From the IMG/VR virus record IMGVR_UViG_3300044974_001280, positions 166,446 through 230,445 of that record: a DNA stretch of 64,000 nt, one strand, 5' to 3'. A program made the position numbers and the translations under genes. A model generated the notes under the pieces. It was not told the origin of the DNA. It saw only the letters and a list, made by a program, of their open reading frames with translations, and did not search any database. This document shows, piece after piece, positions 1-18,521 of the stretch. Every line of letters starts with the position of its first letter. The first letter of the stretch is position 1.

Positions 1-2347
1 GTGCAATTGACGGATGAGGAGTTATTCTTCGGACCGGTTCTGCATCTGGATCAAAATCCTCATCCTCATCTTCATCCTCACTGGGTGTAGGTTTAGGAGT
101 AGGCTTAGGCTGTGGTTTAGGCGTAGGTTTAGGCAGTGGTTTAGGCAGTGGTTTAGGCAAAGGAGCTGGTTTTCCCTTTTCCTCTTCTTTCTCCCTTTCT
201 GTTTCCGCCTCGTCTAATCTATCGCTAAATTCTGAAAAACTATTGATTCTTCTAGGACTTGTAGATTCGAACAAAGAAAAACTTTTGTGGATTTTTCTGA
301 GTCTAGATTCAGATAACTCTGAAATTTTCTTTCCGTTAATGACTAACTCATCTGCCAAGGAATCGTAATCAATTTTGAGGTTGGATCCTTCCTCAATCTC
401 TTCCTCGATTATAAAATTGGCTAGAGGGTCCTTGATATATTTCTCCACTGCTCTTCTAAGGGGTCTAGCCCCATATTCAGGGTCAAATCCGTGTTTAAGT
501 AACAACTTGTAAACCGAAGTTCCCCAAGTCAGATTAATGTCTTGGGTATTTTTAATCCTATCTGCCACCTTCTCGAGCTCTTTTTCTGCAATCTTTTTTA
601 TTGATTCTTGGTCTATTGACTGAAAAATAACAATATCATCTATTCTATTAATAAATTCGGGCGAAAACTCTTTTTTGATCGCTGCATCGACTCTTGCTTT
701 GATTTCCTCAGGTGATTCTGCTCCAGTCTGTTTTGTTTCATCTTCTGGTTCATCTTTAACCAAAAAACCAATCGCTTTTCTGGGTTCCTTTGATTTAACC
801 TTTTTAGATCCTGTTTTTGATCCCACATTAGAAGTCATGATAATAACACAGTTTGTAAAGTCAACCGTTCTCCCTTGCCCGTCCGTCATCCTTCCATCTT
901 CTAGCACCCCTAGCAGGGATTGTATAACTTGAGGGTTTGCTTTTTCGATCTCATCTAGCAAAATTACCGAATAAGGGTTTCTTCTGACTTGCTCTGTTAG
1001 TTTGCCTCCTTCCGAATAACCTACATAACCGGGAGGTGATCCAAACAATTTAGATCCTGTATGAGCCTCCGAATATTCATTCATATCAATCCTAATCAAT
1101 TTAGATTCCCTAGATCCAAAAAGCTCCTCAGCCAATTTTTTCACCAAATAGGTTTTACCTGTCCCAGTAGGGCCCACGAATAAAAATACCCCTTCAGGTC
1201 TATTAGGGTCTTTAAGACCCGACCTGTTTCTTTTAATTGTTCTAACAACGGTCTCTACCGCCTCGTCTTGACCGATAACTTTTGATTTCAGTCTGCTTGA
1301 CATTCCTTTTAGGATTGCCTTACTGCCCTTTTTCATCGTTTCAACAGGAATCCCTGTTTTATCTGCCACTAGTTTTTCCACCATTTCTTTAGTGACGGTA
1401 ATTTTAGGTCCCATTTGACCTTTCGCAGCCATTTTTTCAAGCCGACTCTCTATCTTTTCTTTTTCATCTGATAGATCTGCAGCAGCATCATAGTCACCTT
1501 CTGCCGTCTTTTGCCTGATCCGGTCTAGGAGTTCTAAATTTTTCTTTTCTAGATTCGCAACCTCCGCATCCGGGGCATTTTTAATGCGAATTCGTGCACC
1601 GGATTCGTCCATCAAGTCGATAGCTTTATCTGGCAAAAATCGGTCTTTAATATACTGCTTAGATAGTTTATAAAAGGATTCTAAGGCTTCTGGTGAATAA
1701 TTAACATGATGCCAATCCCCATATTTTTCTTGGATTTCTCTAAGTATTTCCATGCATTCCTCGTAGGTAGGCTCTTCAACTTTGATCGGTTGAAATCTTC
1801 TTTCCATGGCTCCGTCTTTCTCAATAGTTTGACCATATTCACTATAAGTGGAACCACCGATCATATGAAGTTTGGCTTTAGCCAAAAAGGGTTTGAGTTC
1901 ATCGTAACTTGCTTTAGGTAGAGAATGGAGTTCGTCCACAAAAATAATCAAGTTATCTTCCTCAATTTCACGGGCCAAAAGGGGTAAATAACCTCCATTA
2001 ACTATTTTTTTAAATGCCCAGGTCAAATCTATTAACTTTTTCCCCTTTAAAAAACCGGGACATTTATCGCTTGCCATTAAAAGAGCAAGCTTATCCACAA
2101 TAGCGGTTTTTCCAACGCCCGGCTCTCCAACCAAAACTGGATTATCCTTGGTTTTCCTGGCCAGAATGCGAAGCAACTGTTCCAATTCCTTATCCCTTCC
2201 AATTACTTCATTTATCTCTCCCTCCTTCGCTGCTTTGGTCATATCCTCACCGTATGCTTGCCAAAGCTTTTCATCATCTGGGACTTTTAGTTCTTCCTCA
2301 GATTCGAATAATCTTAATTTTTTGTAATTCTTGGATATTCTTTTCAT
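1..2347 (-). CDS. clpC: ClpC-type AAA+ unfoldase lacking the Clp N-domain, with a long C-terminal extension (partial; open at the window edge)
   Basis: Manual translation from ATG 2347: GEPGVGKT, IIFVDELH, MERRFQ, RFLPDKAIDLMDE, UVR-like GDYDAAADL, GPTGTGKT, GSPPGYVGY, LLDEIEKA, AIGF loop, FSPEFINRID, YGARPLRR; then a PKP repeat with no stop before position 1. Confidence 0.93.
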   Translation of the reverse strand, partial: MKRISKNYKKLRLFESEEELKVPDDEKLWQAYGEDMTKAAKEGEINEVIGRDKELEQLLRILARKTKDNPVLVGEPGVGKTAIVDKLALLMASDKCPGFLKGKKLIDLTWAFKKIVNGGYLPLLAREIEEDNLIIFVDELHSLPKASYDELKPFLAKAKLHMIGGSTYSEYGQTIEKDGAMERRFQPIKVEEPTYEECMEILREIQEKYGDWHHVNYSPEALESFYKLSKQYIKDRFLPDKAIDLMDESGARIRIKNAPDAEVANLEKKNLELLDRIRQKTAEGDYDAAADLSDEKEKIESRLEKMAAKGQMGPKITVTKEMVEKLVADKTGIPVETMKKGSKAILKGMSSRLKSKVIGQDEAVETVVRTIKRNRSGLKDPNRPEGVFLFVGPTGTGKTYLVKKLAEELFGSRESKLIRIDMNEYSEAHTGSKLFGSPPGYVGYSEGGKLTEQVRRNPYSVILLDEIEKANPQVIQSLLGVLEDGRMTDGQGRTVDFTNCVIIMTSNVGSKTGSKKVKSKEPRKAIGFLVKDEPEDETKQTGAESPEEIKARVDAAIKKEFSPEFINRIDDIVIFQSIDQESIKKIAEKELEKVADRIKNTQDINLTWGTSVYKLLLKHGFDPEYGARPLRRAVEKYIKDPLANFIIEEEIEEGSNLKIDYDSLADELVINGKKISELSESRLRKIHKSFSLFESTSPRRINSFSEFSDRLDEAETEREKEEEKGKPAPLPKPLPKPLPKPTPKPQPKPTPKPTPSEDEDEDEDFDPDAEPVRRITPHPSIA
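80..170 (-). repeat. PKP(L/T/Q) coding repeat (Pro/Lys hinge) in the ClpC extension
   Basis: Repeated ggtttagg units translate on the minus strand as PAPLPKPLPKPLPKPTPKPQPKPTPKPTPS, followed by EDEDEDED. Confidence 0.85.
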
Positions 2348-2368
2348 AAATTTTTTTTACATTTGCAC

Positions 2369-2445
2369 TATATATTCATTCTCGTAAACGGTTCCGTTCC
2401 ATCTCAGAGAAAAATTCGGGGTTTTTTAGAATGATGAAATATATA
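2369..2445. promoter_or_regulatory. Divergent AATATATA (putative late) promoters for clpC and tmRNA
   Basis: AATATATA on minus (2369-2376) and plus (2438-2445); (G/A)ATATATA also at 6167, 6805, 16763, 22436, 58459, 59534, 60304 and 60266 (minus), always shortly upstream of a gene. Confidence 0.6.
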
Positions 2446-2451
2446 AAAAAT

Positions 2452-2891
2452 GGGGCTGAAAGGAATCGACTGGAGGCATAAGTTCTTTGACATGATGCAG
2501 GCGGTGCTAGCTTTGGAAGCACCTAAATATCCTAAGTACTTCTTAAATGGCGAAAATCCATTTTTTGCTTTGGCTGGACTAGGTTCAGCGGAGCCGGTTG
2601 AAGTTGCCTTGGCAGCCTAAACCTCGGGGGGTGACACCCAGGAACAGAAAGTCACGAGGGTGGGAAAAAGGGTTAACAGTACCACACAATCCGTCGATCC
2701 TCAGTAACCCTGCGGGCTCCGGTCCAATACCCTTCAGATCGCTGTAGGGATCGATGATGTGGATTATCTCCTATCACAGTCAAAAACTAGGAGGTAAAGA
2801 TTTGTCTGTTTAGAAAAATGGACTAAGCCTGTGAACGAGTTTCATGGAATTACCTAGCAGGACGGCGGTTCGAATCCGCCCAGCTCCACCA
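2452..2891 (+). ncRNA. ssrA: tmRNA
   Basis: 5' GGGGCTGAAAGGAATCGAC pairs with 3' CAGCTCC-ACCA (G3.U70); T-arm GGCGG-TTCGAAT-CCGCC; tag ORF 2549-2620 GENPFFALAGLGSAEPVEVALAA*. Confidence 0.95.
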
Positions 2892-2921
2892 AAAGTTTGT
2901 CGTAAGACAAACTTTTTTTTT
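2891..2921 (+). terminator. Rho-independent terminator
   Basis: AAAAGTTTGTC-GTAA-GACAAACTTTT plus T run. Confidence 0.85.
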
Positions 2922-5107: not shown

Positions 5108-5893
5108 ATGAGCTCCGTTACCGTCATAATTCCAAATTACAACTTCTCTGAATTTCTTGATACGACTCTTTTTTCCGTTTTTTCGCAGATCACCAATTTC
5201 GACGTGCAAGTATTAGTGGGGGATGATTCTTCTCAAGATCAGAGCGCTGGTATTTTAACACGGTTCAAAAAATTTTACGGGCAGGACAAATTCGACTTTT
5301 TTATCAACACAGAAAATAAGGGAGAAGTAGAAACAGTTAAAAGATTACTTTCTAAAGCTAAAGGAAATTATATAGCCTATCTTGATGGTGATGACTATTG
5401 GATAGATCCTTATAAATTACAGAAACAATTTGATTTTCTTGAGAGTAATCCAGAATTTTCCGCGTCTTCTACCGGTTATTTAACTTTAGAAGGAGAGTAT
5501 GGATTTTGTCCACATCCAGAAGGAGATTTATTTTTTGGAGTTCCCGAAGAATTTATGGATAAAAATTTCACCTCCCCTGAATTTATTTCTACCGGCAGGA
5601 ACTGTGTATATGCATCCTCCCGTTTTTTTAGAAATTATGAGGATCTTTTTCAGCCTTACTTTTTCGAATTTCCGTATTCAGATTGGCCCATGAATTATGA
5701 ATTAAGCTTAAGGGGTAAGATTAACTACGATCATTACCCTAGCTACATTTATAGGAAACATTCGAATTCTTTAACTCATCCTAAAGAAATAGAAAAAGTG
5801 GATGAAACAAGTGAAAAAGAATGGCTTGATCAAAAGTCCCTGATTTTTACCAGGAGAAAAGAAGAATTTCAGAAAAATCAGAATAAACAATAG
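5108..5893 (+). CDS. Glycosyltransferase family 2
   Basis: VIIPNYN, GDDSSQD, YLDGDDYW. Confidence 0.9.
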   Translation: MSSVTVIIPNYNFSEFLDTTLFSVFSQITNFDVQVLVGDDSSQDQSAGILTRFKKFYGQDKFDFFINTENKGEVETVKRLLSKAKGNYIAYLDGDDYWIDPYKLQKQFDFLESNPEFSASSTGYLTLEGEYGFCPHPEGDLFFGVPEEFMDKNFTSPEFISTGRNCVYASSRFFRNYEDLFQPYFFEFPYSDWPMNYELSLRGKINYDHYPSYIYRKHSNSLTHPKEIEKVDETSEKEWLDQKSLIFTRRKEEFQKNQNKQ

Positions 5894-5898
5894 AATCA

Positions 5899-6147
5899 AT
5901 GGAGACGAAAAATCACATTATTAATTCTCTCAAAAAAAGGCATCAGCTTTACACTGGATTACACGATGAGCAAATTAAGAAAGATCACCTCTGGGTGCTG
6001 AACCATCCCTTAAAAGGCTCGGTTAAAAAAGAATGGACTGATTTTGGGGTAAATTTAATTATGGCTGAAATGGGCTTGGATCAGAGATCCGCCGAGATTG
6101 AGATGTCTTTCTTGGAGCAAGAGTACGAATCTTTAGCCTCTAGATAG
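5899..6147 (+). CDS. Hypothetical protein
   Basis: ORF in a co-directional run. Confidence 0.65.
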   Translation: METKNHIINSLKKRHQLYTGLHDEQIKKDHLWVLNHPLKGSVKKEWTDFGVNLIMAEMGLDQRSAEIEMSFLEQEYESLASR

Positions 6148-6190
6148 GTTCACGACACCCAGATTGGATATATAAAGGAAAAAATATCCA

Positions 6191-6778
6191 ATGCTATCAA
6201 GAATTTTACTTTTTGTCCTTTTTTTTCCTTTTTGTACATATTCACAAAGAGCATCTGTAGCGGTTAATGCGGGGGAATACTCTCTCGTTTACTCTGAAAT
6301 ATATCAGCAACCTCTAGAATTATCATACTCGGTCAGATGTACTGCGGCAAAGGAGAGCAGACAAGGATTGGATTTTTACCGGGTTGATTCCATCATTACC
6401 TCTGATCATGCGGATTACGAAAAGAATATCTGGGACAAAGGGCACCTAGCCCCGGCGGCTACTTTCAGTTGTTCTAAGGAGTCACTAGTAAGAACTTTCT
6501 CCTACCTCAACTGTGCTCTCCAACACCAAGATTTAAATCGGGGGGTTTGGAGAATTTTAGAGGCCAAAGAGAGACAATTGGTAGCAGAATTTCATCAGGT
6601 CGACGTTCTCATTAAACTAGATTTTTCAGGGTCTCCTGAAAAATTAAGTACGGGAGCAACAGTTCCAACTGGTTTTTGGAAAATCCTAACCATCGACAAG
6701 AAAGAAAAAATAACTTATTATTTTCCAAATCGTAAGCCGGCCTTTACAGATCCTAAAAAATTTCAAATAGCAAATTAA
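6191..6778 (+). CDS. Secreted DNA/RNA non-specific endonuclease (NucA/Serratia-like)
   Basis: Signal peptide; WDKGHLAPA, TFSYLNC..Q..LNRGVW..LE, VPTGFWK. Confidence 0.9.
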   Translation: MLSRILLFVLFFPFCTYSQRASVAVNAGEYSLVYSEIYQQPLELSYSVRCTAAKESRQGLDFYRVDSIITSDHADYEKNIWDKGHLAPAATFSCSKESLVRTFSYLNCALQHQDLNRGVWRILEAKERQLVAEFHQVDVLIKLDFSGSPEKLSTGATVPTGFWKILTIDKKEKITYYFPNRKPAFTDPKKFQIAN

Positions 6779-6843
6779 AAAATTTGAAACCTTGTTGGTG
6801 ATTCAATATATAAAGAAAGTTAAAACAAAAAACAAAAAAAACA

Positions 6844-7005
6844 ATGACAAAATCCCTGCTTACGCTCGCTCTCATTTCCATCCTAAGCTCCTGCGGTCCT
6901 GTAGTAGAAACTACAACTGATGAACCGGCAGTAGTTGAAGAAACCACTCCAGTTGACACTACAACAGAAGCTACCGCCCCTGTTGATACAGTTTCAGCTC
7001 AATAA
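6844..7005 (+). CDS. Small Thr/Glu-rich lipoprotein (53 aa, not in the ORF track)
   Basis: MTKSLLTLALISILSSC-GPVVETTTDEPAVVEETTPVDTTTEATAPVDTVSAQ; own promoter motif and terminator. Confidence 0.8.
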   Translation: MTKSLLTLALISILSSCGPVVETTTDEPAVVEETTPVDTTTEATAPVDTVSAQ

Positions 7006-7020
7006 GATTTCTTCTCTTCA

Positions 7021-7043
7021 ACCCAGCTTCGGCTGGGTTTTTT
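7021..7043 (+). terminator. Rho-independent terminator
   Basis: ACCCAGC-TTCG-GCTGGGT plus T run. Confidence 0.9.
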
Positions 7044-7068
7044 GTGATTAATTTACAAATTTGAACTT

Positions 7069-7701
7069 ATGCATAGATCAGAAGTGATCAATCAGATTAT
7101 CAGTACCAAAAAATTTAGCACCTACTTGGAGATAGGAGTAAGATGGCCTGAGGATTGTTACGATTTAATTCAATGCGAAGAGAAATCTGGGGTCGATCCA
7201 GGTCTAGAAAATCCTGAAAATCCGGTCAAGTATCCGTTTACCTCTGATGAATTTTTTTCCAGGCTAGAAAATAATCTGTTGGATTTACCTCCTGATTATG
7301 AGTGGGATCTTATTTTTATCGACGGATTACACCTTTCTTACCAGGTAGAAAAAGACATCTTAAATTCTTTGAATCACTTGACAGAAGAGGGAGTTATAGT
7401 TCTTCATGATTGTGATCCTTTTATGTATGAAGTAAATTACATTCGGGTCATCGAAGATTATCTTGGAGTAGCATGGAATGGAACAGTTTGGAAAACTATC
7501 TATAAGTTAAAGGCAACCAGGCCAGATCTGAATATTTGTACTGTTAATACCGACGAAGGTGTTGGACTGATCAAAAGGGAAAGCCAAGAGCTCGTTCCTT
7601 TCGATAACCCATATTTTGAGTATAAAATTTTCCAGCAAAATAGAACCAGAGATTTGAATTTAATTTCCCCTGAAAAAATATCTTCCTGGATTTTAGATTG
7701 A
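7069..7701 (+). CDS. Class I SAM methyltransferase (Methyltransf_24-like)
   Basis: YLEIGV, DLIFIDGLH, GVIVLHD, WNGTVWK. Confidence 0.85.
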   Translation: MHRSEVINQIISTKKFSTYLEIGVRWPEDCYDLIQCEEKSGVDPGLENPENPVKYPFTSDEFFSRLENNLLDLPPDYEWDLIFIDGLHLSYQVEKDILNSLNHLTEEGVIVLHDCDPFMYEVNYIRVIEDYLGVAWNGTVWKTIYKLKATRPDLNICTVNTDEGVGLIKRESQELVPFDNPYFEYKIFQQNRTRDLNLISPEKISSWILD

Positions 7702-7761
7702 AACTTAAAATCCATCGAAAACTAATTCAGATTAGGCCGTATAATTTGAAAATTCATCCCA

Positions 7762-8538
7762 TTGAAAACATTTCAAAAGCCCTCACAAGCCATCAAGTGG
7801 GCTAAGGAAAAATTGATCGATCACGGATATGTCGTACAGACCGAGAGATGGCAGGGTATACCTTCCCCTGACGACATGTGGGAAACCTTAAATACTTCTT
7901 TCTCTATGTTTGTCCCCCACACACTCGAAGAACTACGTGATGAGGTCAGACCTAATCTTCCCTGGGCGGACGATCATTTTGAAGAAAGAATCGGGGGCCA
8001 GCCGCTGAATCCACCTCCTTCTAACGAATGGTGGCCTTTCAACCAAAAGAAGAATTCCCAATTCAAAACAGAGGAGAAATTTTCTCACACTTATCCAGAA
8101 AGACTCTGGCCTAAATTTGCATCAGAAGAACCCAATTCGACCATGTTTGGCATTAGGTACAACTACGGTGACTTTGGTGATGTGATTGATTTGTTGGCAA
8201 GAGAACCTTTCACTAGACAGGCTTTTCTGCCCCTGTGGTTCCCGGAAGACACTGGATCTGTCCACGGGGAACGAGTTCCTTGTACAATCGGCTATCATTT
8301 TATGAGAAGAGCGGATTATCTACACATCGTGTATTACATCAGGTCCTGTGACTATCTCCGCCACTTTAGAGACGATATCTATATGGCTTGTCGGAAAGTT
8401 TTTTGGGTTCTAGAAAAATTGAGGGAAAGAAATCCCGAATCCTGGGGCGAGGTTAAACCTGGATTTTTTACCATGCACATCACTTCTTTGCATTGTTTCA
8501 ATAAGGAGAAAGAAGTTCTAAGACAAAATAATAAATAA
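7762..8538 (+). CDS. Thymidylate-synthase-fold enzyme, probable pyrimidine (dCMP-type) modifying enzyme
   Basis: TRQA, catalytic VPCT, RSCDYLRHFRDD (Asp where ThyA has the PFN Asn), SLHCF. Confidence 0.8.
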   Translation: MKTFQKPSQAIKWAKEKLIDHGYVVQTERWQGIPSPDDMWETLNTSFSMFVPHTLEELRDEVRPNLPWADDHFEERIGGQPLNPPPSNEWWPFNQKKNSQFKTEEKFSHTYPERLWPKFASEEPNSTMFGIRYNYGDFGDVIDLLAREPFTRQAFLPLWFPEDTGSVHGERVPCTIGYHFMRRADYLHIVYYIRSCDYLRHFRDDIYMACRKVFWVLEKLRERNPESWGEVKPGFFTMHITSLHCFNKEKEVLRQNNK

Positions 8539-8545
8539 AAAAATT

Positions 8546-9475
8546 ATGATCTCTCTAAATCACATTTTACCGGATAGAAACGGGATAGACTTTACCAGTC
8601 ATTTTGACGAGGAAAGGGAAATTGTAATTAAGTTTATAGATTCTCACACAAGATTGTGTTATTGGGGTGACATAATTAATGTTTTTCCCAAATGTTCATA
8701 CTGGGTAGCATATAGCGGTAGAATCACAAAATTTATCACTTTTGTAGTAGAGGATTTGCAAACTGGAGAAATCCTACTCGAAGTTTGTGATTACTCAGAT
8801 ACTTTTAGGCATGATATAAGAAATTTGGACCCAAAGAACAGGTTGAAAAATATAGGAAGTAATCTTTCAAAAAAAGACTTAGTAACAGGGCTTGTACTTT
8901 GGGAGATTTTTTTAAGTGGGGAATACAACCACGAACATTGTAAAGTGGAACCTGGAGATGTTGTTGTTGATATTGGGGCAAACATCGGTTTCTTTTCCTT
9001 TTTTTCGATTACAAAAGGAGCTGCACAAGTTCACTCGTTTGAACCAGACCCCAAGCTATCAAGTTTTATTCAAACAAACTTCGGTGATTTGCCAATTCAT
9101 GTCCACAATTTAGCTGTGTGGTCGGAAAAAAAGGATTTGAAACTAAATATTCATGAGTCAAGTGTTTTGAATTCAGTTTCTGTTTCGTTCGATCACACCG
9201 ATGAAAGTGTTTTTTGTCAAGGAGTTGTCCTGGAAGAATGGGCAAAAGAAAATGAGGTAAAAATAGATTTTTTAAAAATAGACTGCGAGGGAGGTGAATG
9301 GGAAATTTTTCCAAACATGAGCTCTGAATTTTTAAAGTCTATACCAAAGATAGTTTTGGAATATCATATTCATCCTCCGGATCAATTATTGCTTATCTTT
9401 TCAGAAAATGGATTTCAAACACACCACACTGGAAATATGATCTGGGCTTGGCAGAATAAAAAGATCTTGTCTTAG
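8546..9475 (+). CDS. FkbM-family methyltransferase
   Basis: VVDIGANIGFFS, SFEP, LKIDCEGGE. Confidence 0.92.
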   Translation: MISLNHILPDRNGIDFTSHFDEEREIVIKFIDSHTRLCYWGDIINVFPKCSYWVAYSGRITKFITFVVEDLQTGEILLEVCDYSDTFRHDIRNLDPKNRLKNIGSNLSKKDLVTGLVLWEIFLSGEYNHEHCKVEPGDVVVDIGANIGFFSFFSITKGAAQVHSFEPDPKLSSFIQTNFGDLPIHVHNLAVWSEKKDLKLNIHESSVLNSVSVSFDHTDESVFCQGVVLEEWAKENEVKIDFLKIDCEGGEWEIFPNMSSEFLKSIPKIVLEYHIHPPDQLLLIFSENGFQTHHTGNMIWAWQNKKILS

Positions 9476-9476
9476 C

Positions 9477-10598
9477 ATGAATTCTGATAATTTAATAGGA
9501 GAAAAAATATCAGATAAAAAGTTCTGTGTCATCATAGATGCATATCCCCAAACCACGGAGGAACAAGAAATTCTTCTGGCCAATCTAAAAATTTTTCAAC
9601 AAAATGAGATAGACGTTCTTTTAACTAGCCACCATCCATGTACTCCCGAGATTATTGAAAACACTACTTATTTTATTTTTGAAAGGAAAAACAATTATCA
9701 TTTCCTTGATTCAGACATTCTAAATTACAATCTAGAGGGAATACAAAATCCAGTTTACCTGAAATACATTCAAATAGGAAATGAAATGTTTAGAGACCAT
9801 TTGGTTGTTACCGGTTGGTCGGTTTCCATTGTCTCCCAATTTGTTAATTCGATTAAATTTTTGTGGTCAAAGGGATATGAATTTGCCTTTTATTTTGTTG
9901 GAGATTTCAAATGTCCGGATAATATTCAACAAAAATTCTCTGAAATTTTTTCGAATTTAGGGGAGCACAAAAATTACTTTATAAAAAATAATCCAAATTT
10001 TAGTAGCTGGTATTGCCCACACCTTTTTGGGTTTACTTTGGACGAAAGTTTGATTCAAAAAATTCCAAATCTCGATTTTTCGGATAATTCCAATTTTCAA
10101 AAGATTTTTCCCAATTGTGGTCTTGAAGATGTGATGCTAAAACTTTTTGGCGGGGATAATAATCTAGTTGATGAACATTCCGAGATGGATAAATTTTTCG
10201 GATTCGGAAATTGGAATACAGTAAGTTCGATCATAAAACCTGGGCCAAGCGCTTTACATTTCACCACAACTTCTTCACTATTCTGGAAGGAAGATCTATC
10301 GGATTGTTATTTACTTTTAAATGTTGAACCAGGTTGCCCTTGTAATGAAGTCAGCTTCTCCATTAAGATTATTACTGAAAATTCAGAAGAAATTTTCCAT
10401 CGCGAAATAATTCTAGGAAAGGGAGGGTGGTACAAAGAAAAATTGAATGATTTGTTTGTAGATGGGGACTCTGTAGTTTTCACAAAAAAATTACATAATA
10501 TAGAAGATGAAACATGTCAATTCACAGATTCTATAAAAATTAAAAGAGAAAACTTGTCTAAATATGCTTTGGTAAAAAATTACTATAAAATCGAATGA
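9477..10598 (+). CDS. Putative glycosyltransferase-like protein (paralog of 3414)
   Basis: IIDAYP..LLTSHHP..YFIFERKN. Confidence 0.5.
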   Translation: MNSDNLIGEKISDKKFCVIIDAYPQTTEEQEILLANLKIFQQNEIDVLLTSHHPCTPEIIENTTYFIFERKNNYHFLDSDILNYNLEGIQNPVYLKYIQIGNEMFRDHLVVTGWSVSIVSQFVNSIKFLWSKGYEFAFYFVGDFKCPDNIQQKFSEIFSNLGEHKNYFIKNNPNFSSWYCPHLFGFTLDESLIQKIPNLDFSDNSNFQKIFPNCGLEDVMLKLFGGDNNLVDEHSEMDKFFGFGNWNTVSSIIKPGPSALHFTTTSSLFWKEDLSDCYLLLNVEPGCPCNEVSFSIKIITENSEEIFHREIILGKGGWYKEKLNDLFVDGDSVVFTKKLHNIEDETCQFTDSIKIKRENLSKYALVKNYYKIE

Positions 10599-11365
10599 AA
10601 AGAAAAGAAATAAGTGTTATAATGCCGGTCTACAATTATGCTTATTTTTTAGATCGTGCTTTTTTTTCCGTTTACGTGCAAAAAATCGACTGCAATATTC
10701 ATTTTATAGCCTGCGATGACTGTTCTACAGATCAAAGTCTGGCTATTTTACACAGATTAAAAAATTTTGAAAACGAAAATTTTAAAATTTCGATATTTTC
10801 CAATAAAGAAAACAAAGGATTTATAGAAACCGTTATTTTTCTTCTCAAAAATTGTTCAACTTCTTATGTTGCTTATATAGACCCAGATGATTATTGGATA
10901 GATCCATATAAACTAAAAAAACAATTTGATTTTTTAGAAAATAATCCTGATTTTTCTCTCGTTAGCACTGGATATTTGATTAGTGAAGGAAGAAAATTGG
11001 TTCCCTCGGCGGATGGGAGCTTTTGGATTGCTGCTATGACAGAGTATAACTCCGTTTTACATCCAATTAGTGACGGAGAAATTGACAAAAAACTTTTACA
11101 TCATAGTAACTTGTGCTACTCATCATCAAGATTTTTTAGAAATTTCACTGACATTGATTTAAGTTATGTTAAAAATAAGCATTTCATAGATTGGGCTACC
11201 AATTTTGAATTATCTCTTCGCGGTAGAATAGGATATCTTGATTATCCATCATTTGTTTATGAAAAAAAAGAAGATTCAATGTCATCTAAAGCTCAAACTG
11301 AAATAACAGAAAAAGATTTAGATGAAATTAAATCGATTTTCAATCAAAAATTTCATAATTTTTAA
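10595..11365 (+). CDS. Glycosyltransferase family 2 (paralog of 5108)
   Basis: VIMPVYN, DDCSTD, IDPDDYWIDPYKL, SSRFFRN. Confidence 0.9.
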   Translation: MKRKEISVIMPVYNYAYFLDRAFFSVYVQKIDCNIHFIACDDCSTDQSLAILHRLKNFENENFKISIFSNKENKGFIETVIFLLKNCSTSYVAYIDPDDYWIDPYKLKKQFDFLENNPDFSLVSTGYLISEGRKLVPSADGSFWIAAMTEYNSVLHPISDGEIDKKLLHHSNLCYSSSRFFRNFTDIDLSYVKNKHFIDWATNFELSLRGRIGYLDYPSFVYEKKEDSMSSKAQTEITEKDLDEIKSIFNQKFHNF

Positions 11366-11376
11366 ATTTTTTAAGA

Positions 11377-12537
11377 ATGAAAAATATTCAATTATTCAAA
11401 CCTAAGTTCAGAACATCAGAAATCTGGGAACATATGCAAGAGTGTATGGAAATAGGATGGACAGGTTTAGGTTTTAAAACTCAGCAGATTGAAGAAGAAT
11501 GGAAAAAATACACCGGATTTAAGCATGCGCATTTTCTAAATTCGAACACCTCTGGTTTGCATCTTGCCTTAAAAATTTTAAAAGACGCCAATAAATGGAA
11601 AGAAGGAGACGAGATTATCACGTCCCCCTTAACTTTTGTGTCTTCAAATCACGCAATAATGTACGAAAGACTGAGACCAATCTTTGCAGACGTAGATGAA
11701 TTTCTATGTCTGGATCCAAAATCAGTAGAATCAAAAATCACCAAAAAAACCAAAGCTGTTTTATTTGTGGGAATTGGGGGTAATGCCGGGAGGTTCGATG
11801 AAATAGTAAATTTTTGCCAACGCAAAGGCCTTAAAATTATTTTAGATGCCGCACATATGGCTGGAACCTGGATAAAAAACAAAACAGAGGTTGGTGTTGG
11901 TTACTCGAAAGATCATGTTGGTTTAGATGCTGATGTTTCTATTTTTAGTTTTCAGGCGGTCAAAAATCTTCCGACCGCAGATTCGGGAATGATCTGTTTC
12001 AAGAATGAAGATTATGACGTATTAGCCAGAAAATTATCTTGGCTTGGAATTTCTAAAGACACTTACCAAAGATCACACGACAAAGGAAGTTATAAATGGG
12101 AATATGATCTCGTTGATGTTGGTTTCAAATATCATGGTAATTCTATGATGGCTTCGATGGCTTTAGTTGGTTTGAAATATCTTGAAGAGGATAACACCAG
12201 AAGAAGAGAAATCTGCCAAATGTATGAAAAGTCATTTCAATCTGCAGGCATCCAGTCAGTTAAAGTTTCTCCGTACACAGAACTTTCTTCTAGGCATTTG
12301 TATCAAATTGTTGTGGAAGAAAGAAACAAAACTATGGAATTTTTAAATATTCGTGGGATATATCCAGGAGTTCATTATCGTGATAATACCCATTATGATA
12401 TGTACAAATCACAATTTGGGTTGAATCCGAATTCATTGAACCTGAGCGAGAAAATTATTAGTTTACCTTTACATTTATTTTTAACCGATGATGATATTGA
12501 ATTTGTGATTCAAAACGTTATCGAATCACAAAAATAA
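11377..12537 (+). CDS. DegT/DnrJ/EryC1/StrS PLP-dependent sugar aminotransferase
   Basis: NSNTSGLHLAL, SPLTFVS, LDAAH, FSFQAVKNL, ISLPLH. Confidence 0.95.
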   Translation: MKNIQLFKPKFRTSEIWEHMQECMEIGWTGLGFKTQQIEEEWKKYTGFKHAHFLNSNTSGLHLALKILKDANKWKEGDEIITSPLTFVSSNHAIMYERLRPIFADVDEFLCLDPKSVESKITKKTKAVLFVGIGGNAGRFDEIVNFCQRKGLKIILDAAHMAGTWIKNKTEVGVGYSKDHVGLDADVSIFSFQAVKNLPTADSGMICFKNEDYDVLARKLSWLGISKDTYQRSHDKGSYKWEYDLVDVGFKYHGNSMMASMALVGLKYLEEDNTRRREICQMYEKSFQSAGIQSVKVSPYTELSSRHLYQIVVEERNKTMEFLNIRGIYPGVHYRDNTHYDMYKSQFGLNPNSLNLSEKIISLPLHLFLTDDDIEFVIQNVIESQK

Positions 12538-12542
12538 CATTT

Positions 12543-12947
12543 ATGACCATTCGCGAATTTCAGAAGGGAGATGAAGCTGGATTACTGGAAATCTTGAAGG
12601 AGACCTGGTACATCACAGAAATACAAGAAAACGTTTTATCTGAATGGATGACAAATAATTACAATTTTGTTGCGGTTGAAGAACAAGAAATCATAGGAAC
12701 AATTACACTCCATCTCCAAAGAAAATTAATCCGAAATGGCGGGTTAGCAGGATTCATTGAAGATGTGGCGGTGAAAGAAAAATTTAGAGGTAATAAAATT
12801 GGTTTTTTATTGGTTCAAAAAGCTTTGGAAAAAGCCAGGGATCTTGGATGTTATAAGGTTATTCTATCCTGTTTCGATGAGAGAATTAATTTCTATGAAA
12901 GATGTGGATTTTTCAGGGAGTGCAATACTATGAGAGTGGATCTTTAA
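12543..12947 (+). CDS. GNAT acetyltransferase (glucosamine-6-P N-acetyltransferase-like)
   Basis: KLIRNGG..GFIEDVAV..RGNKIG, GCYKVILSC, FYERCGF. Confidence 0.9.
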   Translation: MTIREFQKGDEAGLLEILKETWYITEIQENVLSEWMTNNYNFVAVEEQEIIGTITLHLQRKLIRNGGLAGFIEDVAVKEKFRGNKIGFLLVQKALEKARDLGCYKVILSCFDERINFYERCGFFRECNTMRVDL

Positions 12948-12957
12948 AATAAAAAAA

Positions 12958-13599
12958 ATGAACAATTCATACAACTTAAATTTAGATGGTATCATGGATG
13001 GACATCTAAAAACTTTATATAGAGGAATTATAACTGAAAAATCCCCATTTGATTACGTAATGTATCAAATGATAATTAATGAAATAAGACCCGATTTGAT
13101 AATAGAAATAGGGACTAATTATGGAGGATCGTGTCTGTATTTGGGTGATATTTTAAATAATATAGGTAAAGGTATGGTTCATACTGTGGATATTCAGGAT
13201 GAAACTTTTTTATCAAATTCCGAAGAAAAGAGGGGTTTGATTAATCGACATCCAAGAATTCAGAGATTCTTGGGAGGTTATCAAGAATACAACTTGGATT
13301 ATGCATCCTCATTTAAAAAAATTATGTTGATTGAAGATGGGTCACACAACTATAACGATGTTTTGTCTGTGATGAATAAATTCAAAGATTTAATCAGCGA
13401 AGATTCCTATATGATCGTTGAAGACGGAACTGTGAATTGGATGGGCATCGAAAAAAACTATGACGGAGGTCCTCTTAGAGCGATAGAAGAATTTTTACCA
13501 CAAAATCCACAATTCGAAATAGATAGAAAATGGTGTGATTTTTATGGTTACAATGTCACTTTTAATCCAAATGGATATTTAAAAAAAATTAATTTTTAA
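12958..13599 (+). CDS. CmcI-family (cephalosporin hydroxylase-like) O-methyltransferase
   Basis: KSPFD..YQ..I..IRPDLIIEIGTNYGGS, EDGSH, YMIVED, NPNGYL. Confidence 0.9.
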   Translation: MNNSYNLNLDGIMDGHLKTLYRGIITEKSPFDYVMYQMIINEIRPDLIIEIGTNYGGSCLYLGDILNNIGKGMVHTVDIQDETFLSNSEEKRGLINRHPRIQRFLGGYQEYNLDYASSFKKIMLIEDGSHNYNDVLSVMNKFKDLISEDSYMIVEDGTVNWMGIEKNYDGGPLRAIEEFLPQNPQFEIDRKWCDFYGYNVTFNPNGYLKKINF

Positions 13600-17468: not shown

Positions 17469-18521
17469 ATGAAATTAAAATTGGAGTATGTTTGGTTAGA
17501 TGGATATCAACCCGAACCAAATTTGAGATCAAAAGTAAAGATTTTCGATTATACCCCGTCAAATCTGAACACTCTTTCGCCCCAACACGCAAAACCTAGA
17601 CCAGAAGAACTTCCAGAATGGTCTTTTGATGGAAGTTCCACCCGGCAGGCTGAAGGTAATTTCTCAGATTTGATTCTAAAACCAGTGAGGGTTTATGCAG
17701 ATCCTCTCAGAATGGGCTTTTGCTATCTCGTAATGTGTGAGGTTCTAAATCCAGACCGCACCCCACATTCTTCCAATACTAGAGCCTTGATCGGAAAGGA
17801 TTCTCATGCTCTTTGGTTTGGGTTTGAGCAAGAGTATGTGCTCAGGTGGTTCAATAAAAATAGTAATCGGCCGGTAGGATTTGAAAATTTCAACCCACCC
17901 GAGTCTCAGGGCAAGTATTATTGTTCAGTCGGTCATCCTTATTCCGCTGGCAGAAATATTTCAGAGGAACATTTGGATGCCTGTCTTTCTTGTGGCATTC
18001 AGATCACAGGCACCAATGCCGAAGTGATGCTCGGTCAGTGGGAATATCAGGTTTTTGGCCAGGGAGAACAGACGGCCGCAGATGATCTTTGGATATCTAG
18101 ATTTTTGCTCATGAGAATTGCAGAAAATTACCAGATCAAAGTTGACTTTCACCCCAAGCCCATGGGAGCAGAGGAAGATTGGAACGGATCAGGAATGCAC
18201 ACCAATTTTTCAAATAATAGAATGAGAGAAACAGGAGGGGAAGAATTTTTTAACAGCATTTGTCAAGTGCTGGAAAAAACCCACGATGTTGCTATTTCCC
18301 TCTATGGATCGGACAATCATCTGAGACTTACCGGCAAGCACGAAACCCAAAGCATTTCGAAATTCAGTTGGGGTGTAAGTGATAGAGGAGCATCAATCAG
18401 AATACCCATTTCTACCTCTGATAAGTGGTTGGGTTATCTTGAAGACAGGAGACCAGGATCAAATGCGGATCCTTATAAAATCACCAAATATCTCTCCAAC
18501 TCTCTCGAGGAATTAGAATAA
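17469..18521 (+). CDS. glnA: Glutamine synthetase type II
   Basis: LEYVWLDG, WSFDGSST, WFGFEQEY, NAEVMLGQWEYQ, DWNGSGMHTNFS, DRGASIRIP, YLEDRRP. Confidence 0.97.
   Translation: MKLKLEYVWLDGYQPEPNLRSKVKIFDYTPSNLNTLSPQHAKPRPEELPEWSFDGSSTRQAEGNFSDLILKPVRVYADPLRMGFCYLVMCEVLNPDRTPHSSNTRALIGKDSHALWFGFEQEYVLRWFNKNSNRPVGFENFNPPESQGKYYCSVGHPYSAGRNISEEHLDACLSCGIQITGTNAEVMLGQWEYQVFGQGEQTAADDLWISRFLLMRIAENYQIKVDFHPKPMGAEEDWNGSGMHTNFSNNRMRETGGEEFFNSICQVLEKTHDVAISLYGSDNHLRLTGKHETQSISKFSWGVSDRGASIRIPISTSDKWLGYLEDRRPGSNADPYKITKYLSNSLEELE

What the first reader, a model, noticed from the sequence alone, without database searches (positions are those of the whole stretch)
1..2347. Remodelled ClpC: no N-domain, lost D1 pore loop, C-terminal fusion after a PKP hinge
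Seen: the protein enters the D1 domain after ~30 aa. The usual AG.KYRGEFEER loop is replaced by LTWAFKKIVNGGYLPLL, while the D2 GYVG loop is intact. After D2 the frame continues through a Pro/Lys hinge and an acidic stretch past the window edge. Inference: substrate selection has moved to a fused C-terminal domain.
Basis: partly seen in the sequence, partly recalled or inferred. Interest (0 to 1): 0.6.

Follow-up and report, generated by a model that had tools for sequence, protein, structure and literature searches.

The report
Phage ClpC unfoldase with gripless first ring
A lake-water giant phage carries a stripped-down ClpC protein-unfolding motor that has lost its N-domain and both substrate-gripping loops of its first ring and instead has a long floppy tail, not a fused domain, whose end is predicted to clip onto the protein made by the next gene.

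Summary
The sequence observations are correct, but the "fused C-terminal domain" is not there. The ORF (minus strand, window 2347 to 1) stops 39 codons beyond the window edge, giving 821 aa. It matches ClpC from D1 to D2-small (E 1e-150).

- **Missing:** Clp_N and both D1 pore loops (two deletions of about 8 aa).
- **Retained:** all ATPase motifs of both rings, the D2 GYVG loop and the ClpP-docking IGF loop.
- **Tail:** residues 661-821 model as a hairpin, two helices, about 75 disordered Pro/Lys-acidic residues encoded by tandem repeats, and a terminal helix.

The window lies in a 230-kb viral contig. Lack of an N-domain is common in viral ClpC-like proteins. The loop deletions plus the tail define a small, metagenome-only clade of about 19 clusters. 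In that clade the gene is always followed by two unknown genes (338 and 92 aa), which are a split form of one protein of other large phages. A complex prediction places the terminal helix in the conserved groove of the 338-aa protein (score 0.64, best control 0.39).

Best reading: a ClpP-coupled, D2-driven unfoldase that reaches its adaptor or client through a C-terminal tether. This is a new variant of a known kind. A tmRNA gene that ARAGORN missed lies just upstream.

The parts
1..2347 (-). ClpC-like double-ring AAA+ gene. The complete ORF is 821 aa (P0002) and runs 118 nt beyond the window's left edge (L001:1382-3847, minus strand; G000 166327-168792).
   Evidence: ORF lists and translation. 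Pfam: AAA_lid_9 at 195-294, AAA_2 at 383-572, ClpB_D2-small at 579-659. PDB: B. subtilis ClpC residues 166-797 match query 32-662 at E 8.6e-151. PHROG 4871 'ATP-dependent protease', E 4e-196.
2255..2347 (-). N-terminal peptide (residues 1-31) that stands in place of the Clp_N domain. It begins MKR, followed by a basic then an acidic stretch.
   Evidence: MKR start and an acidic position are conserved in all 16 clade rows. AF2 confidence is low (pLDDT 39-48). An in-frame stop lies 3 codons upstream of the ATG.
2105..2128 (-). D1 Walker A, GEPGVGKT (residues 74-81).
   Evidence: G74, E75, G77-T81 are invariant in alignment A1.
1958..2029 (-). Remnant of the D1 pore-1 loop (residues 107-130). The KYRGEFE-type segment of cellular ClpC is deleted and no conserved aromatic residue remains.
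   Evidence: Gaps in the alignment to ClpC. An 8-column deletion is shared by the whole clade. Walker A to Walker B spacing is 58-60 only in this clade, against 65-68 in about 250 other Clp/Hsp100 proteins and 75 other viral loci. The Tyr of GGY is not conserved in relatives.
1925..1948 (-). D1 Walker B, IIFVDELH (residues 134-141).
   Evidence: F136, D138, E139 and H141 are invariant.
1898..1924 (-). Site of the second deletion, the D1 pore-2 loop (residues 142-150, SLPKASYDE). It is 8-9 residues shorter than in ClpC.
   Evidence: 8-residue gap against ClpC. Walker B to LKP spacing is 9-12 in the clade and 17-18 elsewhere.
1424..1567 (-). ClpC-length middle (M) domain: a helical hairpin, residues about 261-308.
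   Evidence: Aligns to ClpC in one stretch but to ClpB in two stretches. AF2 helices at 261-282 and 286-308. Pfam UVR is not detected in the clade.
1019..1030 (-). D2 pore-1 loop, GYVG (residues 440-443).
   Evidence: G440, V442 and G443 are invariant and Y441 nearly so.
722..811 (-). Flexible D2 surface loop (residues 513-542) carrying the ClpP-docking tripeptide, AIGF at residues 525-528 (window 764-775).
   Evidence: G527 and F528 are invariant in all 22 rows including cellular ClpC, aligned to the VGF of B. subtilis ClpC. The loop is disordered in the model.
176..367 (-). Structured start of the C-terminal extension (residues 661-724): a beta hairpin with L(V/I)ING...SE, then two helices carrying the conserved (L/I)FE and F..F motifs.
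   Evidence: AF2 strands at 656-675, helices at 678-694 and 704-724, pLDDT about 57-75. Motifs kept in at least 80% of clade members.
1..175 (-). Disordered Pro/Lys and acidic spacer (residues 725-797, running off the window). It is encoded by 12/36-nt and 6-nt tandem repeats (window 87-159 and 56-80). The conserved terminal helix, residues 800-817, lies outside the window at L001:1397-1450 (minus strand).
   Evidence: pLDDT below 50 over 723-797. Tandem repeats. Spacer length and sequence vary between relatives while the flanking motifs are kept. Short-read contigs break at window position 119.
2452..2891 (+). tmRNA gene, divergent from and directly upstream of the ClpC-like gene. Its tag frame ends in ...AEPVEVALAA followed by a stop.
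   Evidence: Rfam RF00023, 72.1 bits (gathering score 47), E 5.4e-28, full-length model match. Tag frame. Missed by ARAGORN. Terminator-like hairpin at 2891-2916 right after its 3' CCA.

Best explanation
The gene encodes a phage ClpC-type double-ring AAA+ unfoldase of a derived viral lineage.

Shown:
- It keeps both nucleotide sites, a ClpC-length M-domain, the D2 GYVG pore loop and the (I/V)GF loop that Clp ATPases use to dock on ClpP.
- It has no N-domain.
- Both pore loops of ring D1 are deleted.
- It ends in a 160-residue extension that is mostly a variable disordered spacer between conserved short motifs.

Inferred:
- D1 still binds and hydrolyses ATP, so it serves assembly or regulation, but it can no longer grip polypeptide.
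- D2 alone pulls the substrate, and the hexamer feeds a ClpP peptidase. In this phage that would be the host's; some relatives encode their own.
- The N-domain and the D1 loops normally start substrate engagement. Without them, selection is handed to a partner held on a leash: the terminal amphipathic helix (residues 800-817), at the end of a roughly 75-residue flexible linker, binds the conserved groove of the 338-aa protein encoded immediately downstream.
- That 338-aa protein works together with the next 92-aa protein. The pair acts as the adaptor, or is itself the dedicated client.
For: **Family and motifs.** ClpC at E 1e-150, aligned from D1 to D2-small. Invariant in A1: Walker A/B, sensor-1 T167, Arg fingers R183/R184, and in D2 GPTGxGKT, D465/E466, N507, R568, R628 and G527/F528.

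**Deletions are a clade signature.** Spacing is 58-60 and 9-12 residues in the clade against 65-68 and 17-18 in all other Clp/Hsp100 proteins examined. The clade is monophyletic (support 100), sister to forms that lost the Tyr but not the loop length, and nested among N-domain-less viral ClpC-like proteins.

**Tail.** AF2 shows no globular domain. Motifs are conserved at 45% overall identity while the spacer varies and is repeat-encoded.

**Synteny.** The order ClpC-like, about 320-350 aa, about 90 aa is seen in all 7 loci examined: own, L002, L004, L005, L006, L086, L087.

**Split gene.** The 92-aa protein equals an insert inside long relatives of the 338-aa protein (40% identity, E 4e-18).

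**Docking prediction.** Verdict 'supports binding'. Score 0.64 against a best of 3 controls of 0.39. That mark was reached by 58 of 80 solved complexes and 2 of 110 mismatched pairs. The counts hold only roughly, because my own alignment and three chains were used. Runs agree in at least 21% of contacts and the partner's pLDDT is at least 37. The interface is tail residues 800-817 against partner residues 185-237, which include the family-invariant G191, P192, M222 and F233.

**ClpP context.** ClpP genes lie 2.5-6.6 kb from the clade gene in L087 and L002, and about 1.2-1.5 kb downstream of ordinary viral ClpC-like genes in many loci.

**Role of D1 loops.** In ClpA, D1 pore loops initiate direct substrate engagement and D2 loops do the unfolding (PMC8666677).
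Against: - No ClpP gene is found in this 230-kb record (CheckV 85% complete) or in two related viral records. Use of host ClpP is assumed and the host is unknown.
- One of the three complex runs scored 0.02 and one control reached 0.39. The partner chain is mostly disordered, and the job differs from the tool's calibration.
- The groove of the 338-aa protein is equally conserved in long relatives from phages whose ClpC-like protein has no tail. Its original ligand is therefore something else.
- The 338-aa protein has no recognisable fold or family, so 'adaptor' is only a role assigned by position.
- No biochemical data exist. ATPase activity of D1 is inferred from motifs only.
Confidence: 0.42

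Rival explanations
1. ClpP-independent remodelling chaperone. The hexamer threads or pulls on phage proteins, for example during virion or replication-complex assembly, without degrading them. The tail recruits it to an assembly that contains the 338-aa protein.
For: No ClpP in 230 kb of this genome or in two related records. Jumbo-phage ClpA/ClpX homologues have been proposed as translocases or assembly aids (PMC7824862). Relatives of the 338-aa protein are widespread core-like genes of large phages.
Against: The G-F of the ClpP-docking loop is invariant throughout the clade, on a long flexible loop as in ClpC. ClpB-type disaggregases lack this loop (established knowledge). Clade members in L002 and L087 do have ClpP nearby.
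Confidence: 0.2
2. The 338-aa/92-aa pair is the substrate or a regulator rather than an adaptor. The tail captures it for unfolding or timed destruction, or the tail is an autoinhibitory or autodegradation element that folds back on the ring.
For: The same docking prediction is equally compatible with a client. A tethered helix on a long linker can reach the ring's own entrance. Conserved LFE and F..F motifs near the ring have no assigned partner.
Against: Strict co-linearity of the three genes across the whole clade, including the split-gene arrangement, suggests stoichiometric co-function rather than enzyme and prey. Nothing tested here separates the two readings.
Confidence: 0.2
3. One reading: a globular substrate-selection domain is fused to the C-terminus and continues beyond the window.
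For: The frame does continue past the edge through a hinge-like Pro/Lys run.
Against: The ORF ends 39 codons later. No family hit is found on residues 655-821. AF2 gives only helices and about 75 disordered residues. Relatives have shorter tails with the same terminal motif.
Confidence: 0.02
4. A decaying or artefactual gene: D1 is degenerating, or the tail arises from misassembly or a frameshift across the tandem repeats.
For: Short-read contigs break at the repeat (window 119). The D1 loops were lost stepwise in the lineage.
Against: Every catalytic residue of D1 is invariant across a clade that is only 45% identical. Two IMG/VR contigs give the identical 821-aa product. The terminal motif is kept in frame in 16 further clusters. 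The phage recurs in about 19 lake and freshwater runs.
Confidence: 0.03

Closest known systems
ClpC of Firmicutes and Actinobacteria (B. subtilis ClpC/MecB, S. aureus ClpC, M. tuberculosis ClpC1)
   Same: Order D1, short M-domain, D2, D2-small. About 42-46% identity over residues 32-662. All ATPase motifs, the D2 GYVG loop and the ClpP-docking (V/I)GF loop are present.
   Different: No Clp_N domain, which is the site of MecA, McsB and phospho-arginine binding (established knowledge). Both D1 pore loops are deleted. It has a 160-aa C-terminal extension. It falls below the NCBIfam equivalog cut-offs. It is encoded by a phage.
N-domain-less ClpC-like proteins of large phages (PHROG 4871 'ATP-dependent protease'; about 650-710 aa, often with a ClpP gene next door)
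   Same: Viral origin, no N-domain, IGF loop, same core. The clade nests among them in the tree.
   Different: They keep KYRG(Q/E)FEER and the normal spacing (67 residues), and they end 46-77 residues after GARPLRR. Only the clade described here has the double deletion, the long tail and the two partner genes directly downstream.
Type II AAA+ machines with one ring that does not grip substrate (p97/Cdc48 D1, NSF D2, Pex1/Pex6 D1)
   Same: Division of labour: one ring keeps nucleotide binding for assembly or regulation while the other ring does the pulling. This is an analogy drawn from established knowledge.
   Different: Different AAA+ clades with no specific sequence relation. In Clp/Hsp100 proteins D1 normally has functional pore loops. 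In ClpA they start substrate engagement (PMC8666677).
SspB-ClpX tethering (an adaptor with a long flexible linker and a C-terminal docking peptide)
   Same: Logic of a short docking peptide on a long disordered leash joining an unfoldase and a delivery factor. This is an analogy drawn from established knowledge.
   Different: The polarity is reversed: here the leash and peptide belong to the unfoldase. The partner has no sequence or fold similarity to SspB or MecA.

Membership tests
Clp/Hsp100 class I, ClpC type | Two AAA+ modules, each with Walker A, Walker B, sensor and Arg-finger residues | tested here: met
   Pfam AAA_lid_9, AAA_2 and ClpB_D2-small. Invariant in A1: K80, D138/E139, T167, R183/R184, K398, D465/E466, N507, R568, R628.
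Clp/Hsp100 class I, ClpC type | N-terminal double-repeat Clp_N domain (PF02861) | tested here: not met
   No Pfam hit. The clade's precomputed Pfam lists lack PF02861 while cellular hits have it. Only 31 residues precede D1, and a stop lies 3 codons upstream of the ATG.
Clp/Hsp100 class I, ClpC type | D1 pore-1 loop with conserved aromatic residue (KYRG-E/Q-FE) | tested here: not met
   Deleted: gaps against ClpC, an 8-column deletion in the clade, and spacing of 58-60 against 65-68.
Clp/Hsp100 class I, ClpC type | Short ClpC-length M-domain between D1 and D2 | tested here: met
   One continuous alignment to ClpC but split alignments to ClpB and Hsp104. AF2 helical hairpin at 261-308. The Pfam UVR model itself does not hit.
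Clp/Hsp100 class I, ClpC type | D2 GYVG pore loop | tested here: met
   Residues 440-443. G440, V442 and G443 are invariant.
Clp/Hsp100 class I, ClpC type | ClpP-docking (I/L/V)-G-(F/L) tripeptide on a flexible D2 loop | tested here: met
   AIGF at 525-528, aligned to the VGF of B. subtilis ClpC. G527 and F528 are invariant. The loop is disordered in the model.
Clp/Hsp100 class I, ClpC type | Score above the curated equivalog cut-offs (NCBIfam ClpA, ClpB, ClpV, ClpK, ClpG) | tested here: not met
   ClpB 620 bits against 1232; ClpA 559 against 993; the others are also below their cut-offs.
Clp/Hsp100 class I, ClpC type | ATP-dependent unfolding and activation of ClpP | not testable with these tools
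   Needs biochemistry. No ClpP gene is found in the 230-kb record.
PHROG 4871 (viral 'ATP-dependent protease' ATPase) | Profile match over the family length | tested here: met
   E 4e-196; residues 15-667 match profile positions 161-753 of 764. The first 160 profile positions (the N-domain) are unmatched.
Known Clp adaptors (MecA, SspB, ClpS) as identity of the 338-aa/92-aa partner | Sequence or fold similarity to an adaptor family | tested here: not met
   No Pfam or PHROG family. No PDB or ESM-Atlas fold match. No ClpS in the genome. The adaptor role is proposed by position and predicted docking only.

The most novel reading that the evidence does not exclude
The ClpC-like motor, its tethered 338-aa/92-aa partner and the adjacent phage tmRNA form one phage-specified tagging-and-destruction pathway.

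- The phage tmRNA adds an unusually long tag of about 24 residues ending in ALAA to stalled chains.
- The tethered partner recognises tagged or other chosen proteins, as SspB does.
- A long degron threads through a D1 ring that has deliberately lost its grip, so that only delivered substrates reach the D2 motor and ClpP. The result would be a private protease that ignores the host's normal ClpC clients and adaptors.

Hints: the tmRNA sits 105 nt upstream of the gene, and a clade relative has ClpP and SmpB side by side 2.5 kb from its copy.

Against: the tmRNA adjacency is not conserved in the other loci checked, and no SmpB is found in this record.
Probability: 0.07. Interest if true: 0.8.

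Novelty: new variant of a known kind. Interest (0 to 1): 0.55.

Why it matters
**A natural pore-loop experiment.** How the two rings of double-ring unfoldases share work is an active question. In ClpA it has been studied with engineered pore-loop mutants (PMC8666677). This clade is a natural version of that experiment. Evolution removed both D1 pore loops while keeping every D1 catalytic residue, with intermediate forms still extant. At the same time it added a C-terminal leash and moved a partner gene next door. It is therefore a ready-made system for asking what a gripless but ATP-competent D1 ring is for, and how substrates can be handed directly to D2.

**Phage biology.** The protein points to a phage-controlled proteolysis or remodelling module in abundant freshwater large phages. 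It has none of the docking sites (N-domain) through which host adaptors control ClpC. The two partner proteins belong to an uncharacterised family widespread in very large phages.

**Scope of the claim.** Phage Clp ATPases and ClpP as such are already known (PMC7824862). The novelty is the variant, not the presence of a Clp gene.

Tried and rejected
- **ClpP partner in the same genome.** The Pfam PF00574 search and a search with a relative's phage ClpP both found nothing in the 230-kb record. Related viral records G001 and G002 also had none. The record is 85% complete, so absence is not proven.
- **Other Clp-related genes.** No SmpB, ClpS or second Clp ATPase, and no tRNA.
- **ARAGORN for tRNA/tmRNA.** It found nothing in the window or the genome. 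Rfam then found the tmRNA.
- **Function of the 338-aa and 92-aa proteins.** No Pfam or PHROG family. ESM-Atlas feature hits of 0.87 or less are leads only (LPD1/LPD23, a putative metalloprotease). Foldseek against the PDB gave no match at E <= 0.001. Atlas shape search gave TM <= 0.28.
- **GenBank phages.** No member of the clade. All hits are below 45% identity and do not cover the tail, and many are short unannotated contigs.
- **Other copies of the tail motifs in the genome.** None found.
- **Conservation of the tmRNA adjacency.** No tmRNA at the gathering score in the flanks of six related loci.
- **Host identification.** An exact scan of genomes with the 32-nt tmRNA 3' end gave two unrelated hits, Thiomicrospira and a Bacteroidales MAG. 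This is not informative. Lack of Shine-Dalgarno motifs is only a lead towards Bacteroidota.
- **Expression.** One freshwater metatranscriptome holds small contigs inside the gene. These are assembled contigs from a library that may contain DNA, so transcription is not shown.
- **Literature.** Searches found no description of a Clp/Hsp100 protein with deleted D1 pore loops or of this phage clade. The library is incomplete.
- **Hexamer or ClpP-complex modelling.** Not possible within the size limits.
Full report
**Where the window lies**

The window is the last 64 kb of a 230,445-bp linear viral (IMG/VR) record that CheckV rates 85% complete. A simple ORF call places 256 of 277 ORFs on the plus strand. 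The gene in question heads one of the few minus-strand blocks, four genes at G000 164702-168792. The same DNA is present almost word for word in about 19 lake-water and freshwater metagenome runs. Contigs from independent runs are identical over window 119-2885.

**The observation**

The ORF starts at ATG 2347 on the minus strand and runs off the window. With 1.5 kb of extra flank (L001), the frame ends 39 codons beyond the edge, giving 821 aa (P0002).

Pfam finds AAA_lid_9 (195-294), AAA_2 (383-572) and ClpB_D2-small (579-659), and no Clp_N. The best solved relative is B. subtilis ClpC: residues 166-797 align to query 32-662 in one stretch, E 8.6e-151. Alignments to ClpB and Hsp104 split in two at the M-domain, so the M-domain is ClpC-length.

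That alignment shows gaps at two places in D1. One is around residues 107-130, where ClpC has its pore-1 loop. The other is an 8-residue gap right after Walker B, where ClpC has its pore-2 loop. The D2 GYVG loop (440-443) and the ClpP-docking tripeptide (AIGF, 525-528, aligned to the ClpC VGF) are intact.

The open frame extends only 3 codons upstream of the ATG, and the upstream DNA is occupied by another gene (see below). The missing N-domain is therefore real.

**How unusual the features are**

A search of 5.8 billion clustered proteins gave a tight group of 16 clusters. They are 45-92% identical, 755-826 aa long, cover 96-100% of the query (87% for the closest), and have no Clp_N. The score then drops from 687 to 564 bits for ordinary cellular ClpC. 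An exhaustive search of 1.84 billion representatives found 57,918 relatives, but only about three representatives of this group.

In the alignment (A1) all group members share:

- the short MKR-initiated N-peptide;
- the 8-column deletion of pore loop 1 and the 8-9-column deletion of pore loop 2;
- the C-terminal extension.

Meanwhile Walker A/B, sensor-1 T167, Arg fingers R183/R184 and all D2 motifs are invariant.

Measured over about 270 Clp/Hsp100 hits, the Walker A to Walker B distance is 58-60 only in this group and 65-68 in all others with a recognisable Walker B. The distance from Walker B to LKP is 9-12 against 17-18.

Among 79 ClpC-like loci from IMG/VR, most (about 65) also lack the N-domain, at 650-710 aa. 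So that feature is ordinary for phages. But those proteins keep KYRG(Q/E)FEER, the 67-residue spacing and a short C-terminus. Only L002, L004, L005 and L006 have the deletions and the long tail. L007 and L008 are intermediate, with the Tyr lost and spacing of 64.

A FastTree phylogeny of 113 rows (local support values only) makes the group one clade (support 100). It is sister to the intermediate forms (99) and sits inside the N-domain-less viral radiation. GenBank phage records contain no member.

**The tail**

No family model matches residues 655-821 apart from low-complexity noise. AlphaFold2 with A1 (mean pLDDT 73.6) models the tail as follows:

- strands 656-675 that extend D2-small;
- helices at 678-694 and 704-724 (pLDDT about 57-75);
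- a disordered stretch over 723-797;
- a terminal helix at 803-817 (pLDDT about 75).

Across the clade, four short motifs are conserved:

- L(V/I)ING...SE;
- (L/I)FE;
- F..F;
- the terminal I..PS...P.A..K..E.DV..R motif.

The spacer between them varies in length and composition. In this phage the spacer is encoded by 12/36-nt and 6-nt tandem repeats, which also break short-read contigs at window position 119. Even so, the tail is clearly under selection as a set of linear motifs on a leash.

**Neighbours**

In all seven loci examined, the gene is followed within a few bases by two further genes. The loci are this genome, L005 (the same phage in another assembly), L004, L006, L002, L086 and L087. 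The first neighbour is a protein of about 320-350 aa (here P0123, L001:364-1377, minus strand). The second is a protein of about 90 aa (here P0127, L001:77-352, minus strand).

Neither has a Pfam or PHROG family or a recognisable fold (model pLDDT 75.6).

The family alignment (A2) shows that longer relatives (453-540 aa), from contigs of up to about 400 kb, carry an insert homologous to the 92-aa protein (40% identity, E 4e-18). In this clade one ancestral protein is therefore split into two adjacent genes, which argues that the two act together. Weaker relatives of the core (residues about 136-266) lie about 6 kb from ordinary ClpC-like genes in many other viral loci and occur in 630-640-kb phages.

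**Predicted docking**

One complex prediction was run with the 338-aa protein (using A2), the 92-aa protein, and tail residues 676-821 as the partner. Its verdict was that the model supports binding but does not show it.

- Score 0.64, best of 3 controls 0.39.
- The mark was reached by 58 of 80 solved complexes and 2 of 110 mismatched pairs.
- These counts hold only roughly, because my own alignment and three chains were used.
- Runs agree in at least 21% of contacts, and the partner's pLDDT is at least 37.
- One of the three runs scored 0.02.

The confident interface is tail residues 800-817 against partner residues 185-237, which include the family-invariant G191, P192, M222 and F233. The motif occurs nowhere else in the genome.

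**ClpP**

No ClpP gene is found in this record, or in related records of 150 kb and 102 kb. Clade members in L002 and L087 do have a ClpP gene 6.6 and 2.5 kb away. Many ordinary viral ClpC-like genes have one about 1.2-1.5 kb downstream. The invariant G-F on a disordered loop argues that ClpP coupling is retained. In this phage the peptidase would be the host's, or it would be encoded in the missing 15% of the genome.

**Interpretation**

In ClpA, D1 pore loops initiate direct substrate engagement and D2 loops drive unfolding (PMC8666677). A ClpC-type motor without an N-domain and without D1 loops has lost both usual entry points, yet keeps an ATP-competent D1, a full D2 motor and the ClpP loop.

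The most economical reading has four parts:

- D1 is an assembly or regulatory ring;
- D2 is the sole gripping ring;
- the output is ClpP;
- selection is by a partner captured through the C-terminal leash.

Whether the partner pair is an adaptor or the client cannot be decided here. A ClpP-independent chaperone role is the main rival. Phage Clp ATPases, ClpP and ClpS have been noted before in jumbo phages (PMC7824862). I found no description of this variant.

**Seen in passing**

- The 640-nt 'gap' upstream of the gene holds a full-length tmRNA (window 2452-2891, plus strand; Rfam 72.1 bits against a gathering score of 47). ARAGORN missed it.
- Its tag frame reads about GENPFFALAGLGSAEPVEVALAA followed by a stop.
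- A terminator-like hairpin follows at 2891-2916.
- The record has no SmpB and no tRNA.
- The adjacency is not conserved in six related loci. One clade relative has ClpP and SmpB side by side near its copy, plus a roughly 20-tRNA array.
- tmRNA and SmpB in huge phages are known (PMC7162821).
- Genes in this genome lack Shine-Dalgarno motifs and have A-rich, G-poor leaders. This is a lead towards a Bacteroidota-type host and nothing more.

**Verdict**

The 'fused domain' is refuted. The protein is a new variant of a known kind: a viral ClpC-type unfoldase with a gripless D1 ring and a C-terminal tether. Its mechanism is plausible but untested.

Noticed in passing
window 2452-2891 (+): Full-length tmRNA gene in the supposed intergenic gap, divergent from the ClpC-like gene (Rfam RF00023, 72.1 bits, E 5.4e-28). 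ARAGORN misses it. The tag frame reads about GENPFFALAGLGSAEPVEVALAA, which is unusually long and ends in the canonical ALAA. The 230-kb record has no SmpB and no tRNA.
   Followed up: partly
window 2891-2916 (+): Strong terminator-like hairpin (11-bp stem followed by a T run) directly after the tmRNA 3' CCA.
   Followed up: no
L001:364-1377 (-) and L001:77-352 (-), just left of the window: The two genes after the ClpC-like gene (338 aa and 92 aa) are a split version of one protein. In 453-540-aa relatives from very large phages, the 92-aa sequence is an insert inside the 338-aa one (40% identity, E 4e-18). The family has invariant D144, H150, E151, K154 and G155, and no known fold or family.
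   Followed up: yes
whole genome G000 (start-codon leaders of 220 ORFs): No use of Shine-Dalgarno motifs (8.6% of genes against 12% background). Leaders are about 50% A and about 10% G. This pattern is typical of Bacteroidota and their phages (from general knowledge), so it is only a lead to the host. The phage is found in about 19 lake and freshwater metagenome runs.
   Followed up: partly
window 5108-13599 (+): Cluster of sugar or base-modification genes: two family-2 glycosyltransferases (5108-5893, 10595-11365), a thymidylate-synthase-like protein (7762-8538), an FkbM methyltransferase (8546-9475), a DegT/EryC1 aminotransferase (11377-12537), a GNAT acetyltransferase (12543-12947) and a CmcI-type O-methyltransferase (12958-13599). 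It could serve DNA hypermodification or glycan synthesis.
   Followed up: no
window 6191-6778 (+) and 17469-18521 (+): A non-specific DNA/RNA endonuclease (Endonuclease_NS, E 7e-22) and a glutamine-synthetase-like protein (Gln-synt_C and Gln-synt_N) are encoded by the phage.
   Followed up: no
L087:6806-7921 and L087:15958-20620 (relative's contig, ENA k141_839866): A clade-B relative carries ClpP and SmpB as adjacent genes 2.5 kb upstream of its tailed ClpC-like gene, and an array of about 20 tRNA genes 3.7 kb downstream. Its ClpP is 70-75% identical to the ClpPs next to ordinary viral ClpC-like genes.
   Followed up: partly
window 56-159 (-): The Pro/Lys and acidic linker is encoded by tandem repeats of 6, 12 and 36 nt. 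Logan short-read contigs of several runs end at position 119, and the reads tool skipped positions 1-118 as repeat. Linker length may vary between genomes.
   Followed up: partly
G000 99591-110927 (+), outside the window: A single 3,778-codon ORF, the longest in the genome. Several others exceed 1,200 codons. None was examined.
   Followed up: no
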